From positions 1 through 64,000 of IMG/VR virus record IMGVR_UViG_3300041402_000314: a DNA stretch of 64,000 nucleotides, one strand, 5' to 3'. The notes under the pieces were generated by a model, which searched no databases, was not told the origin of the DNA, and saw nothing but the letters and a program-made list of their open reading frames with translations. Within the stretch, counting starts at the first letter, position 1; every line of letters begins with the position of its first letter. The position numbers were made by a program, and so were the translations under genes. Shown in pieces: positions 2,916-28,511 of the stretch.

Positions 2916-2989
2916 TGGAGCTGGCGATGAGATTTGAACTCACATATCAAGGGTTGCAGCCAAGCACCTAGCCATTCGGACACACCAGC
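2916..2989 (-). tRNA. tRNA-Cys(GCA)
   Basis: Cloverleaf; loop CTGCAAC; U73; encoded CCA. Confidence 0.9.
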
Positions 2990-4363: not shown

Positions 4364-5029
4364 TTATTTTTTCTTAGATCGTCTCTTATTGTTCTCTTGC
4401 TCTTTTTTGGTAGCCCACCTACAGTTGGAAGGTTCATAGTTACCATCATTATATATTCTGTCAATGGACAATCCTTCTGGTCTCTCACCCATATCTTCTA
4501 AGAAATTAACAAAACCGTCTTTACCTAACCATCTTTCACAAACTGTTATCCCTCTACCACCATAGTTTTTATATCCAGTTGCCTTTTCATTAGCACATCT
4601 CTGTTTCATACTACCCCAACTAATGTATGTTCTGGTGCGAATAGCACCATGTTTATAATTAGGATTTACACAACCACAAGTTTTCTTTTCACCTTTTCTT
4701 AATGCGTTACTTCTAGTGGTTATTTTATTCCCACAATCACATATACATTTCCAATATACCGCACCAAAATTATTTTTATGAGAAAATTCAACAGCAGTCA
4801 ATTTACCAAATTTCTGTCCAGATATGTCTAATCTTTTAGGTATACACCCACAAGATTTCGTAAATCCTCTTCGTAAAGAAGCTCCAGCAATATTTTTTTC
4901 ATTTCCACAATCACATAGGCATTTCCAGTAAGCTTTTTTATGTTTGCTGAAATGAGAAAACTTTATAATAGCCAACTTACCAAACTTTTGTCCAGTATAA
5001 TCTTTAACTCTATACGGTAGTTTGTTCAT
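4364..5029 (-). CDS. HNH-type homing endonuclease, tandem paralog
   Basis: Same architecture as 3677..4351 ([32 protein letters not shown]). Confidence 0.85.
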   Translation of the reverse strand: MNKLPYRVKDYTGQKFGKLAIIKFSHFSKHKKAYWKCLCDCGNEKNIAGASLRRGFTKSCGCIPKRLDISGQKFGKLTAVEFSHKNNFGAVYWKCICDCGNKITTRSNALRKGEKKTCGCVNPNYKHGAIRTRTYISWGSMKQRCANEKATGYKNYGGRGITVCERWLGKDGFVNFLEDMGERPEGLSIDRIYNDGNYEPSNCRWATKKEQENNKRRSKKK

Positions 5030-5591: not shown

Positions 5592-5667
5592 TGGTACGCC
5601 TACGAGGACTCGAACCTCGATTCTAGGTTTAGAAGACCTATGCCTTATCCTGTTAGACGATAGGCGC
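5592..5667 (-). tRNA. tRNA-Arg(TCT)
   Basis: TAGGT-CTTCTAA-ACCTA; CCA. Confidence 0.92.
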
Positions 5668-5677
5668 ACGATTATTT

Positions 5678-5822
5678 TGGTGTGAGTAGGGGGAATTAAA
5701 CCCATCATGCAACTACTAAGAGTGATCAAGCTCCTTTCGCCAACCTCCCTGCTTCGTCGCGAGAGCGCACATTGTATATGTCTCCCATTGTATCCACAGT
5801 GTACTACCTGTACTTTACCCAC
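5678..5822 (-). ncRNA. 145 nt tRNA-like RNA with ~70 nt insertion replacing the anticodon arm
   Basis: GTGGGTA/TACTCAC-A-CCA acceptor, GTAC-AGGTA-GTAC D-like arm, degenerate GGG-TTTAATT-CCC T-arm; no 7 nt anticodon loop found. Confidence 0.55.
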
Positions 5823-5928
5823 ACATTTATTTTAATGGGCGGTAAGTCTTGGCTCTTAACCGATGGCATATTCATACCTCCTCTTTAAAGTTGGTTGCAA
5901 ATGCACTTACCGCCCGATTTTATTTTTG

Positions 5929-6001
5929 TGCGTCTGGTGGGAGTCGAACCCACTACCGTTGGTTTTAGAAACCACGACTCTAGCCGTTGAGTTACAGACG
6001 C
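5929..6001 (-). tRNA. amber suppressor tRNA(CTA)
   Basis: Canonical spacing GCGTCTG-TA-ACTC-AACGGCTA-GAGT-C-GTGGT-TTCTAAA-ACCAA-CGGTA-GTGGG-TTCGACT-CCCAC-CAGACGC-A places CTA at positions 34-36; CCA not fully encoded. Confidence 0.85.
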
Positions 6002-6008
6002 GAACTAA

Positions 6009-6302
6009 TTAAATTAATCTCATACTCTTAAAATGATCATTGTTTCCAAGACTAGCTATAGCAGTCATTTGATCGCCTATATCAGGCTCTCTGAAACTTA
6101 TGTGACATATTCTATCACACTCCAACTTCTTTGTCAAGCTAATTAATTCGTTCTCGTCTCTAATACTTAAATAGACTAGGGTTCCGTTATCCCAATCAGT
6201 GTCGCGGTTGCGAAGGACATACTCAGCTAAAGCATGACCTCCCTGTACCGCCTGTTGGGATTTACTTAAGTCCTTACGCACCACAACATACAGCTTCTTC
6301 AT
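6009..6302 (-). CDS. peptidyl-tRNA hydrolase type 2-like protein
   Basis: KLYVVVRKDL..QQAVQGGHA and FREPDIGDQMTAIA match the phage Pth2-like family. Confidence 0.8.
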   Translation of the reverse strand: MKKLYVVVRKDLSKSQQAVQGGHALAEYVLRNRDTDWDNGTLVYLSIRDENELISLTKKLECDRICHISFREPDIGDQMTAIASLGNNDHFKSMRLI

Positions 6303-14401: not shown

Positions 14402-14486
14402 TGGCTCCAGCGGTAGGATTCGAACCTACATAGTCCTTTCGGACAGTGATTAACAGTCACCTGCATTGCCAATCTGCCACGCTGGA
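14402..14486 (-). tRNA. tRNA-Asn(GTT) with long variable arm
   Basis: TCCAGCG/CGCTGGA-G-CCA, loop CTGTTAA, extra GTCC-GAAA-GGAC arm. Confidence 0.88.
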
Positions 14487-17605: not shown

Positions 17606-17680
17606 TGGTGAGGCCACTCGGAACTGCCCCGAGATTGACTGGTTAAAAGCCAGATATTCTTCTAGTTGAATTATAGCCCC
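17606..17680 (-). tRNA. tRNA-Lys(TTT)
   Basis: Loop CTTTTAA; non-canonical T-loop GGCAGTT; CCA. Confidence 0.88.
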
Positions 17681-17692
17681 ATTAATTTATAT

Positions 17693-17779
17693 TGGTGGGA
17701 TTGGAAGGATTTGAACCTTCGATGCATCTCTGCGTTCGGTTATGAGCCGAGTGCCTTAACCAGACTAGGCAACAATCCC
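17693..17779 (-). tRNA. tRNA(CAT) Met/Ile2 with long variable arm
   Basis: Loop CTCATAA; extra GCA-GAGA-TGC arm; GGGATTG/CAATCCC-A-CCA. Confidence 0.87.
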
Positions 17780-18258: not shown

Positions 18259-18334
18259 TGGTGTTCCCACCGAGGCTTAAACTCGGTTCTCCATATTGAG
18301 AGTATGGTATCCTAATCAGGTAGACGATAGGAAC
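18259..18334 (-). tRNA. tRNA-Glu(CTC)
   Basis: CCATA-CTCTCAA-TATGG; CCA. Confidence 0.88.
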
Positions 18335-19399: not shown

Positions 19400-19476
19400 T
19401 GGTAGAGCTAGGGGGAATCGAACCCATCCGTTTTATGGTTGAAAACCATATGTCCTAACCGTTAGACGATAGCTCC
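19400..19476 (-). tRNA. tRNA-Glu(TTC)
   Basis: TATGG-TTTTCAA-CCATA; CCA; weak T-stem. Confidence 0.88.
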
Positions 19477-20402: not shown

Positions 20403-20476
20403 TGGTACTCCCTGATGGTACTGCCCCACCGCTTATTGGATGTAAACCAATCGCACTACTATTATACTAAGGGAGC
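20403..20476 (-). tRNA. tRNA-Val(TAC)
   Basis: ATTGG-TTTACAT-CCAAT; T-loop GGCAGTA; CCA. Confidence 0.87.
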
Positions 20477-27452: not shown

Positions 27453-28511
27453 TTACATTTGTTCTTGTTGGAAGAAATAATCTCTTACTACCTTAGAGAC
27501 TTTGTTGTTTACTTCCTTGACATCCAGACCAGCATCGGTAATGATGTCGAGGTCTTCCTTTACGATATCACCAATAACCCATCTGATGAAATCTCCCATT
27601 CCTTTACGATCTATCTCTCCGCCATTCAGAGTATCGAATGTTTCCTGTATGCCTTGCTCCATACGGAAAGCAGGAGTAATCTTATTTACCACTTCATTAA
27701 CAAGATTCATTTTAGCTTCGTCTACTTTAGGCAGCTTCTTTACTTTACTGGTAGAATGCTTTTCTCCCTTGACCTTAAAGCGAAAGTCATTGCCGTTAAA
27801 AACGCCTTTCCAGACCACACCCTCACCAACACCTTCATTTCCTAATTGGAAGGCCACAGGGCATCTTTCCTCGACTTCCAAAGTGATTTCATTCAACTTA
27901 TTCTGAAAAGCCTCTGGTTTATTGAAATCTATTTTTATTTCGAAGGTAGGAAATTCATCTATAAAGTAAATGTTATGATCATTAATTTTACTACCTCTAT
28001 TATTCGGACATACTTTACTTAAGTCTAACCAGAATCCATCTTCTTCATCATCATGAGACGTTATCTTAACATCGAAGATAACGAACATCTTATCAAGCCC
28101 ATTGACCCCAACACCTTTCTGAATAGACCCACCGCTGACTTCCCCGAAAATAGAAATGATGTTATTAATAGTATCGATATTAAAATCCTTAATTATTTCA
28201 GCTACGATATTATTGAATGAAACTTTTCTCGCATGTACGAAACAAGAAAACCCACAATTATCTTTTTCTGGGGTGATGATATTTTTCCTAGATTGCGTCC
28301 AAATACCACTTTCAGCATTAAAGCATACTGCACCATTACTTCCATGAATTTTAGTGGTTCCTGTTAATTTCAGAACTGGTTTCGGTCTCATCCCATCATA
28401 TACGGGTTCACCATCTTCTCCTATTCCTACAAAACTAGCAGAATGGCTTATATGTTTAACAATATTTCTATACTGTTCTATACTTGGGTACTTAATAAAC
28501 TTCTTTTCCAT
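27453..28511 (-). CDS. ATP-dependent RNA ligase (Rnl2-like)
   Basis: KYPSI, TKIHGSN (motif I KxxG), IFGEV, VIFDV, GEGVVW, FKVKGEKH. Confidence 0.88.
   Translation of the reverse strand: MEKKFIKYPSIEQYRNIVKHISHSASFVGIGEDGEPVYDGMRPKPVLKLTGTTKIHGSNGAVCFNAESGIWTQSRKNIITPEKDNCGFSCFVHARKVSFNNIVAEIIKDFNIDTINNIISIFGEVSGGSIQKGVGVNGLDKMFVIFDVKITSHDDEEDGFWLDLSKVCPNNRGSKINDHNIYFIDEFPTFEIKIDFNKPEAFQNKLNEITLEVEERCPVAFQLGNEGVGEGVVWKGVFNGNDFRFKVKGEKHSTSKVKKLPKVDEAKMNLVNEVVNKITPAFRMEQGIQETFDTLNGGEIDRKGMGDFIRWVIGDIVKEDLDIITDAGLDVKEVNNKVSKVVRDYFFQQEQM

What the first reader, a model, noticed from the sequence alone, without database searches (positions are those of the whole stretch)
5678..5822. 145 nt tRNA-framed RNA carrying a structured ~70 nt insert
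Seen: tRNA ends (GTGGGTA/TACTCAC-A-CCA) enclose a duplicated ATACAATG motif and a GC-rich segment. That segment can fold as CTCTC-GC..GC-A-GGGAG or alternatively GCTC-TCGC/GCGA..GAGC. Its T-arm/acceptor junction (GATGGGTTnnATTCCCCCTA) closely resembles that of tRNA-Glu at 19400. It is too short for a tmRNA or a group I intron. Inference: a tRNA-scaffolded functional RNA or a tRNA with an unusual intervening sequence that may be excised and religated by the phage RNA ligase.
Basis: partly seen in the sequence, partly recalled or inferred. Interest (0 to 1): 0.62.

Follow-up and report, generated by a model that had tools for sequence, protein, structure and literature searches.

The report
tRNA-framed small RNA cassette in phage
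A 145-base stretch in the tRNA gene array of an uncultured T4-like marine-sediment phage has the ends of a tRNA but no anticodon arm; it is most likely a small non-decoding RNA cut out like a tRNA, comparable to the unexplained RNAC of phage T4, and not a tRNA with a removable insert.

Summary
On the minus strand, 5822->5678 has a perfect 7-bp acceptor stem, an encoded ACCA, a T arm 18/20 identical to the phage's own tRNA-Glu, a D-like hairpin, tRNA-like spacing inside a ~32-gene tRNA array, and tRNA-like GC (48% against 35% for the genome). A strict scan for this frame finds only this site in 204 kb, with 0.35 expected by chance.

It is not a tRNA. ARAGORN and Rfam find nothing. None of 1065 internal deletions gives a tRNA. 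Ordinary tRNAs in the window already cover all 20 amino acids.

The closest relatives keep the flanks (a conserved 105-nt hairpin RNA upstream, tRNA-Arg 100% identical downstream). In the same slot they carry unrelated RNAs that are also tRNA-framed, and one such family shows compensatory base changes. The element is therefore one swappable cassette of a class of tRNA-scaffolded small RNAs, functionally like T4 RNAC/RNAD but not homologous to them.

Its ~110-nt interior has no detectable homologue and folds no better than shuffled sequence. The cargo's function is unknown, and a decaying relic cannot be excluded. The intron reading is not supported. Expression could not be tested because no RNA runs were found.

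The parts
5678..5822 (-). The 145-nt tRNA-framed RNA ('el145'). RNA position p corresponds to window coordinate 5823-p.
5816..5822 (-). Acceptor stem, 5' strand GUGGGUA. U at -1 and G at +1 suit an RNase P site (established knowledge).
   Evidence: Pairing probability 0.89-0.99.
5682..5688 (-). Acceptor stem, 3' strand UACUCAC.
5678..5681 (-). Discriminator A plus encoded CCA. A 10-nt spacer follows before tRNA-Arg.
   Evidence: Other tRNAs of the array have the same tail and spacer style.
5801..5813 (-). D-like hairpin GUAC-AGGUA-GUAC, with GG in the loop. It competes with an alternative hairpin, UACAG/CUGUG.
   Evidence: p 0.17 for the tRNA register and about 0.8 for the alternative. Enforcing the tRNA frame costs only 1.3 kcal/mol.
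5761..5786 (-). Hairpin A, GGGAG-A-CAUAU-ACA-AUGUG-CG-CUCUC. It holds the second copy of AUACAAUG.
   Evidence: p 0.94. No comparative support.
5709..5760 (-). Hairpin B, the GC-rich body closed by GCGAC/GUUGC. It contains the SD-like words GGGAGGU and AAGGAG.
   Evidence: Thermodynamic prediction only.
5689..5705 (-). T arm AUGGG-UUUAAUU-CCCCC (3 G-C pairs plus 2 mismatches). Nearly the same as the T arm of tRNA-Glu at 19400-19476.
5823..5927 (-). Upstream conserved hairpin RNA ('up105'). It has an 11-bp stem (arms 5905-5915 and 5837-5847) around a nearly invariant 57-nt loop with AGGAGG and AUG. It forms the conserved left flank of the cassette slot.
   Evidence: (z -4.6). Three of 11 pairs changed on both sides and none is broken.
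5928..6001 (-). tRNA with anticodon CUA (amber suppressor type), upstream neighbour in the same transcription direction.
5592..5667 (-). tRNA-Arg(UCU), the conserved right flank of the cassette slot.
   Evidence: 100% identical in L077.
6109..6137 (-). Sigma-70-like promoter match (TTGACA-17-TAGAAT with TG), about 100 nt upstream of the suppressor tRNA. It could drive the operon.
   Evidence: This is a consensus match only; the number of promoter-like matches in the region is not above the shuffle mean.

Best explanation
el145 is a non-decoding, tRNA-scaffolded small RNA.

Proposed mechanism (processing steps are inferred, not shown):
- It is transcribed on the minus strand as part of the polycistronic tRNA array: suppressor tRNA, up105, el145, tRNA-Arg and onward.
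- Its tRNA 'top half' (7-bp acceptor stem, ACCA, T arm, and a D-like hairpin whose GG can meet the T loop) lets host RNase P cut at G5822.
- RNase P cleavage at the 5' end of tRNA-Arg, followed by 3' exonuclease trimming, would leave the ACCA end at 5678.
- The result would be a stable RNA of about 145 nt in which a non-tRNA body replaces the anticodon arm. That body is about 110 nt in all and folds as two predicted hairpins of about 78 nt.

The element occupies a slot between two conserved flanks (up105 and tRNA-Arg). In related phages the same slot holds different, unrelated tRNA-framed cargos, so it behaves as an exchangeable cassette.

What the cargo does is not shown. The fast turnover of cargos and the tRNA-repair and translation genes nearby (PTH2-like, Rnl2-like, RtcB, CCA enzyme) suggest a role in the conflict over tRNAs and translation, for example as a decoy for a host factor that docks on the tRNA elbow or acceptor. 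I hold that as an inference with low confidence.
For: Frame:
- 7/7 acceptor stem plus ACCA plus T arm, the only such site in 204 kb against 0.35 expected.
- Acceptor pairing probability 0.99.
- The T arm equals that of the phage's own tRNA-Glu, and the UUUAA-type T loop is used by another Rfam-called tRNA of this phage.
- GC is 48%, like the tRNAs (50%) and unlike the genome (35%).
- The tail and spacer look like those of the neighbouring tRNAs.

Not a tRNA:
-.
- All 20 amino acids are covered by ordinary tRNAs.

Class and cassette:
- In L077/L078 the flanks are conserved (PTH2 gene 94% nt, suppressor tRNA 89%, up105 85%, tRNA-Arg 100%). A 127-nt RNA with its own 7-bp acceptor and T arm sits exactly where el145 sits.
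- L065 has up105 followed by a 162-nt cloverleaf-like RNA that shares only the 5' GTGGGTAA and the T loop.
- L060, L064, L066, L068 and L071 carry further tRNA-framed non-tRNAs in the slot.
- Family e (L066/L071) keeps all 29 predicted pairs, two through compensatory changes.
- The same genome has a second example at 88665-88781: Rfam tRNA, 44 bits, with a 46-nt block in place of the anticodon arm.

Precedent: T4 encodes RNAC (139 nt, with a T arm) and RNAD next to tRNA-Arg in its tRNA cluster. Both are still of unknown function (PMC3014915, PMC9697503).
Against: - There is no expression or end-mapping data. All listed sequencing runs are DNA.
- el145 as a whole folds no better than shuffles (z about 0). 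T4 RNAC gives z -4.9 and up105 gives z -4.6.
- The T stem has two mismatches.
- The tRNA-register D stem is not the favoured local fold.
- The interior has no detectable homologue anywhere, so no covariation supports any fold of the cargo.
- A loose version of the frame scan is at chance level genome-wide: 108 hits against about 110 in shuffles.
Confidence: 0.55

Rival explanations
1. It is a decaying tRNA-derived relic. A former tRNA or tRNA-like gene was scrambled by the frequent recombination and homing-endonuclease traffic of this region. It may still be cut out by RNase P because the acceptor/T minihelix survives, but it has no function of its own.
For: - MFE z is about 0.
- The T stem has two mismatches, and the D stem is not the favoured fold.
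- The interior is an orphan.
- The slot is hypervariable, and HNH endonuclease genes lie in the neighbourhood.
- The closest relatives do without it.
Against: - The acceptor stem is perfect and ACCA is intact.
- GC stays at tRNA level in a 35% GC genome, whereas the true spacers are AT-rich.
- The same two T-stem mismatches occur in a tRNA-Glu that scores 54 bits.
- Sister cassettes in the same slot show compensatory changes, which is not how debris behaves.
- Part of the interior occurs at >=80% likeness in a metagenome from another study (X5, bins 5692-5773).
Confidence: 0.27
2. It is a tRNA gene interrupted by an intervening sequence of about 70 nt. The insert is excised and the halves are joined by a phage RNA ligase (Rnl2-like or RtcB) to give a decoding tRNA.
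For: - The ends are tRNA-like.
- The phage encodes an Rnl2-like ligase and RtcB.
- Another element of the same genome (88665-88781) does become an ARAGORN tRNA after many internal deletions (589 of 1065).
Against: - For el145, 0 of 1065 deletions give a tRNA. At relaxed thresholds it gives fewer hits than controls with a shuffled interior.
- No anticodon stem can be drawn.
- No EndA is found.
- No self-cleaving ribozyme or intron family matches at E<=10.
- It is too short for a group I intron.
- No amino acid lacks a tRNA.
Confidence: 0.04
3. It is part of a small protein-coding unit. The mini-ORF that starts in the loop of up105 (AGGAGG, 7 nt, AUG; MPSVKSQDLPP...) runs 24 nt into el145. In this reading el145 is its 3' region, or a tRNA-like processing site that releases this mini-mRNA.
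For: - There is a strong SD at ideal spacing, and the first 9 codons are identical in four sequences.
- In this window the ORF ends at UAG inside the D-like hairpin.
Against: - The ORF ends before the cassette in L065 and in L077/L078 (12 aa there against 21 aa here), so the overlap is not conserved.
- All third codon positions of the shared part are invariant, while neighbouring genes differ by 6-17%. Compensatory stem changes alter the peptide (P to A). Both points indicate constraint at the RNA level.
- el145 itself has no conserved ORF.
Confidence: 0.05

Closest known systems
Phage T4 RNAC (species 1 RNA, 139 nt) and RNAD (species 2 RNA, 119 nt)
   Same: Both are small RNAs encoded inside the tRNA cluster of a T4-type phage, on the tRNA strand and next to tRNA-Arg. 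RNAC ends in a canonical T arm followed by an acceptor-like 3' strand. The size is about the same. Their function has been unknown for decades (PMC3014915, PMC9697503). Neither has an Rfam family.
   Different: There is no sequence similarity (alignment z -1.1 for RNAC and 1.7 for RNAD). T4 RNAC folds far better than shuffles (z -4.9) while el145 does not. el145 has a cleaner 7-bp acceptor plus an encoded ACCA and a D-like hairpin. Here the RNA is one of several exchangeable cassettes.
Ordinary tRNA (Rfam RF00005)
   Same: It has an acceptor stem, discriminator plus CCA, a T arm, a D-like arm, a place in the tRNA array and tRNA-like GC content.
   Different: It has no anticodon arm and is 145 nt long. 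It gets no Rfam or ARAGORN call, and none after any internal deletion.
Engineered 'tRNA scaffold' RNAs, where a cargo RNA is inserted in place of the anticodon arm to gain tRNA-like processing and stability (recalled from the literature, not checked here)
   Same: The architecture is the same: an intact acceptor/T/D top half with a foreign structured body in place of the anticodon arm.
   Different: Those are man-made. This one is natural, and whether it is processed and stable has not been tested.
tmRNA and YrlA/Y RNAs (tRNA-like domain plus another module)
   Same: They combine a tRNA-like module with a non-tRNA module. Relatives of this phage do encode real tmRNAs (L054, L073).
   Different: For tmRNA: there is no G3.U70, no tag ORF and no pseudoknots, the element is 145 nt against more than 230, and ARAGORN -m and Rfam are negative. 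For YrlA: that RNA's 5' and 3' ends form the Ro-binding stem, not the acceptor, and this genome has no TROVE/Ro gene.

Membership tests
tRNA (RF00005) | 7-bp acceptor stem followed by a discriminator base and CCA | tested here: met
   GUGGGUA/UACUCAC plus ACCA. Pairing probability 0.99.
tRNA (RF00005) | T arm with a 5-bp stem and a 7-nt T loop (U54, U55, A58) | tested here: inconclusive
   The loop UUUAAUU has U54, U55 and A58. The stem has 3 G-C pairs plus 2 mismatches (p 0.44). The same arm occurs in the phage's tRNA-Glu, which scores 54 bits.
tRNA (RF00005) | Anticodon arm (5-bp stem, 7-nt loop with U33) at the canonical place, and an overall match to the covariance model | tested here: not met
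   No Rfam tRNA match at E<=10 on 5600-5950. ARAGORN is negative even with intron and low-score options. 0 of 1065 deletions give a tRNA.
T4 RNAC/RNAD-type phage stable RNAs | Encoded within the phage tRNA cluster on the tRNA strand, between or after tRNA genes | tested here: met
   It lies between tRNA(CUA) at 5928-6001 and tRNA-Arg at 5592-5667, all on the minus strand. T4 layout.
T4 RNAC/RNAD-type phage stable RNAs | Sequence or structure homology to T4 rnaC or rnaD | tested here: not met
   Global alignment z is -1.1 (rnaC) and 1.7 (rnaD) against shuffles, and there is no blastn-short hit.
T4 RNAC/RNAD-type phage stable RNAs | Accumulates as a discrete stable RNA processed from the tRNA precursor | not testable with these tools
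   No RNA run holds the locus.
tmRNA | tRNA-Ala-like domain with G3.U70, an internal tag ORF and pseudoknots | tested here: not met
   The pairs are G3-C70 and G4.U69. ARAGORN -m is negative. No tmRNA family matches at E<=10.
YrlA / Y RNA | 5' and 3' ends form a Ro-binding helix, and a Ro (TROVE) protein is encoded nearby | tested here: not met
   The ends form a tRNA acceptor stem instead. No TROVE match in the genome, with a positive control.
Intron-containing tRNA (group I or bulge-helix-bulge type) | Removing one internal segment restores a canonical tRNA, and intron machinery is present (ribozyme core or EndA) | tested here: not met
   no restorable tRNA; no EndA, control positive; no intron or ribozyme family.
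HDV-like (theta) ribozyme next to phage tRNAs | Match to the HDV-like covariance models directly 3' of a tRNA | tested here: not met
   None in window 1-28000 at E<=2, although relatives have them (L065:4181-4251, L060:1140-1210).

The most novel reading that the evidence does not exclude
The slot between the conserved up105 hairpin and tRNA-Arg may be a diversity hotspot where T4-like sediment phages exchange tRNA-scaffolded RNA cassettes. These cassettes would act as RNA counter-defence: anticodon-less tRNA mimics that occupy or mislead host tRNA-targeting nucleases or other factors that bind the tRNA elbow. That would be an RNA-based, cassette-encoded arm of the phage-host conflict, and it would also suggest a function for T4 RNAC/RNAD.
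Probability: 0.12. Interest if true: 0.8.

Novelty: new member of a known kind. Interest (0 to 1): 0.45.

Why it matters
T4 has carried two unexplained small RNAs in its tRNA cluster for fifty years. This element, and the unrelated tRNA-framed RNAs in the same slot of its relatives, suggest that tRNA-scaffolded small RNAs are a recurrent and rapidly exchanged feature of T4-like phages, not a T4 oddity.

If these RNAs are expressed, the natural variation between cassettes could be used to ask what such RNAs do: same flanks, different cargo. It would also be a natural counterpart of the engineered tRNA scaffold.

In practical terms, tRNA finders and Rfam miss all of these elements, so phage tRNA regions are under-annotated.

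Tried and rejected
Known families:
- Rfam at gathering threshold and at E<=10, and ARAGORN with tRNA, intron, tmRNA and low-score options, found nothing for 5678-5927.

Homologue searches for el145, all empty:
- blastn against INPHARED phages.
- Exact 19-mer and a gapped frame pattern in IMG/VR.
- A 21-mer in GTDB genomes.
- blastn and nhmmer against all fetched loci.
- blastn-short against the phage's own genome.

Other searches that gave nothing useful:
- The single JGI metagenome scan, with an up105 19-mer, returned one unrelated chance hit.
- The up105 core is absent from IMG/VR and from GTDB genomes.
- PolB found no close relative in IMG/VR (best 31%).
- The protein at 4364-5029 turned out to be a mobile gene with no synteny.

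Points I withdrew or rejected:
- I first took L065:2983-3144 for a true homologue of el145. The interior alignment is at shuffle level (z -0.1), so only the frame is shared.
- Loose frame scans are uninformative: 108 hits against about 110 in the genome, and 4 against 1.1 in the relatives.
- Intron reading: rejected.
- tmRNA and YrlA readings: rejected.
- TAG recoding as the context for the suppressor tRNA: no signal.
- The duplicated 8-mer as a target-site duplication: chance level.
- The 11-nt direct repeat bracketing up105 plus el145 (5672-5682 and 5920-5930) is just the common tRNA tail and spacer.

Full report
**Context**

The window is the first 64 kb of a 204-kb IMG/VR viral contig. The contig has T4-type replication genes: UvsW-like helicase, family B polymerase and a gp46-like ATPase. 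Near-identical DNA occurs in a marine-sediment metagenome, and partial matches occur in cold-seep and marine runs.

Positions 2.9-26.7 kb hold about 32 tRNA genes, all on the minus strand. ARAGORN and Rfam adds four more. The four extra genes read as Cys, Lys, Glu(CUC) and Val. Every amino acid therefore has an ordinary tRNA.

**The observation**

Read on the minus strand, 5822->5678 is:

- GUGGGUA-AA-GUAC-AGGUA-GUAC at the 5' end,
- an interior of about 95 nt,
- AUGGG-UUUAAUU-CCCCC-UACUCAC-A-CCA at the 3' end.

The acceptor stem is 7/7 with one G.U pair, and its ensemble probability is 0.99. The T arm and acceptor junction match the phage's tRNA-Glu at 18 of 20 bases, including the two mismatched outer T-stem pairs. 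A UUUAA-type T loop also occurs in the Rfam-called tRNA at 18262-18334.

A strict frame scan required a GC-core T stem, T54/T55/A58 and a 7/7 acceptor at 95-260 nt. It finds only this site in 204 kb against 0.35 expected, before counting ACCA and the location in the array. A looser scan is at chance level, so the significance rests on the combination of features.

GC is 48%, like the tRNAs (50%) and unlike the genome (35%). The duplicated 8-mer is real but occurs in 10% of shuffles. The favoured local hairpin is 37-62 (p 0.94), followed by a longer hairpin at 63-114. The whole molecule is no more stable than shuffles (z about 0).

**What it is not**

- Rfam gives nothing at E<=10, and ARAGORN gives nothing with intron, tmRNA or relaxed settings.
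- Every single internal deletion that leaves 66-95 nt was tried (1065 in all), and none yields a tRNA. At relaxed thresholds the real sequence gives fewer hits than copies with a shuffled interior.
- The genome has an Rnl2-like ligase, RtcB and a CCA-adding enzyme. It has no EndA and no TROVE/Ro gene.
- The readings as an intron-bearing tRNA, a tmRNA and a YrlA are therefore not supported.

**Comparative evidence**

No homologue of the element turned up in INPHARED, IMG/VR, JGI metagenomes or GTDB genomes. Relatives were reached through the PTH2-like gene just upstream (6009-6302).

In the closest relatives (L077, L078; PTH2 98% aa) the neighbourhood is conserved:

| Segment | Identity to the window |
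|---|---|
| PTH2 gene | 94% nt |
| suppressor tRNA | 89% |
| up105 | 85% |
| tRNA-Arg | 100% |

Exactly between up105 and tRNA-Arg sits an unrelated 127-nt RNA (GGGAGAG...GUCGG-UAUCAAAU-CCGAC-CUCUCCC) with its own acceptor and T arm.

L065 (PTH2 82% aa) has up105 and then a 162-nt RNA that folds unaided into a cloverleaf with a 75-nt 'anticodon' arm and a long variable arm. It shares only GTGGGTAA, the T loop and ACCA with el145, and the interiors align at shuffle level.

L060, L064, L066, L068 and L071 carry yet other tRNA-framed, non-tRNA RNAs after the suppressor tRNA. The pair L066/L071 keeps all 29 predicted pairs, two through compensatory changes: one in the T stem and one in the closing stem of the long arm.

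The same genome has a further case at 88665-88781. It scores as an Rfam tRNA (44 bits), with a 46-nt block where the anticodon arm should be.

In read laying, a 94-kb relative contig matches both flanks but has 301 unlike letters in place of 5677-5992. A run from another study has low-depth contigs at >=80% likeness over 5692-5773.

**Interpretation**

These phages keep a slot in the tRNA operon that is filled by interchangeable RNAs built on a tRNA top half. Established knowledge says that RNase P, the 3'-trimming exonucleases and the CCA enzyme need only the acceptor/T minihelix and elbow. Such an RNA should therefore be released and stabilised like a tRNA.

The T4 precedent is RNAD and RNAC, which follow tRNA-Arg in its tRNA cluster. 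They are expressed late and are still without a known function (PMC3014915, PMC9697503). They are absent from Rfam and are not homologous to el145.

For el145 itself the cargo has no comparative support and no thermodynamic excess. A relic that is merely still shaped like a minihelix remains a serious rival, to which I give 0.27. The idea that the cargo acts as a decoy in tRNA-centred defence and counter-defence is inference only.

**The neighbour**

up105 (5823-5927) is the better-supported RNA:

- z is -4.6.
- It has an 11-bp stem in which 3 pairs changed on both sides and none is broken across three distinct sequences.
- Its loop is nearly invariant and carries AGGAGG plus AUG and a 12-21-codon ORF.
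- At 85-91% identity between genomes, it is more conserved than the flanking tRNAs in L065.
- No Rfam family matches it.

**Limits**

There are no RNA data. All structures of the cargo are single-sequence predictions. The census of sister cassettes was made by eye on 13 loci.

Noticed in passing
window 5823-5927 (-): A conserved 105-nt hairpin RNA ('up105') lies directly upstream of the finding. It has an 11-bp stem with three compensatory pair changes, a nearly invariant 57-nt loop with AGGAGG-N7-AUG and a 12-21-codon ORF (MPSVKSQDL...), and z -4.6. No Rfam match. It is present in L065, L077 and L078, always followed by a different tRNA-framed cassette.
   Followed up: partly
own genome G000:88665-88781 (+) = L069:1666-1782, outside the window: A second tRNA-like gene outside the tRNA array, with class-II-type ends. 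It scores as an Rfam tRNA (44 bits), but a 46-nt block containing a direct repeat (UUAGGUCUGA / UUAGGACUGA) replaces the anticodon arm. ARAGORN misses it. Many internal deletions turn it into an ARAGORN tRNA, so it is a candidate interrupted tRNA.
   Followed up: partly
window 5928-6302 (-); L053-L058, L063-L078: A PTH2-like peptidyl-tRNA hydrolase gene immediately followed by a tRNA with anticodon CUA is a conserved pair across many distant phage contigs. This genome shows no sign of TAG reassignment: 18 long frames end in TAG, and read-through of TAG gains less than read-through of TGA or TAA.
   Followed up: partly
L065:4181-4251, L060:1140-1210, L060:3435-3502: HDV-like ribozyme matches (RF02682; 47, 43 and 31 bits) lie directly 3' of tRNA-Met genes in relatives, as described for theta ribozymes (PMC10879173). 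None is found in this window.
   Followed up: no
window 2919-2989, 17609-17680, 18262-18334, 20406-20476, 14402-14486, 17693-17779 (-): Four tRNAs (Cys, Lys, Glu-CUC, Val) are seen only by Rfam and have deviant T loops (for example UUUAAGC and GGCAGUU). tRNA-Asn (85 nt) and one tRNA-Met (87 nt) carry an extra variable-arm hairpin that is unusual for these types.
   Followed up: partly
L066:1582-1698 and L071:1576-1694; L066:1713-1839, L077:580-706, L078:562-688, L076:492-564: Two further families of tRNA-framed non-tRNA RNAs occur in relatives. Family e has a canonical D arm and a 56-nt long arm. Family f has class-II-like ends and three internal hairpins.
   Followed up: partly
L065:3148-3351 and L071:1695-1917: About 200 nt of further non-coding sequence lies between the cassette and tRNA-Arg. 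The two loci share the motif TGGCG(C/T)G(A/G)TAGCCTGA and have 8-bp terminal stems. This may be another small RNA family.
   Followed up: no
L057:4350-4460 (372-kb phage contig): Two mini tRNA-like minihelices of about 50 nt (acceptor plus T arm plus CCA, with no D or anticodon arm) lie downstream of the PTH2-like gene.
   Followed up: no
window 27453-28511 (-); G000:65441-66469 (+); G000:69383-69754 (+): The phage carries an RNA repair and maturation set: an Rnl2-family RNA ligase at the end of the tRNA array, RtcB, and a CCA-adding enzyme.
   Followed up: no
window 4364-5029 (-): A 221-aa protein with no Pfam hit has relatives in 50 unrelated viral contigs with no synteny, so it behaves as a mobile gene. 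Relatives have HNH endonuclease genes scattered through the tRNA region (L060, L063-L065, L067, L068, L071).
   Followed up: no
L054:360-725, L073:3378-3734, L074:1946-2302: Phage-encoded tmRNA genes lie near the PTH2/suppressor-tRNA pair in more distant relatives.
   Followed up: no
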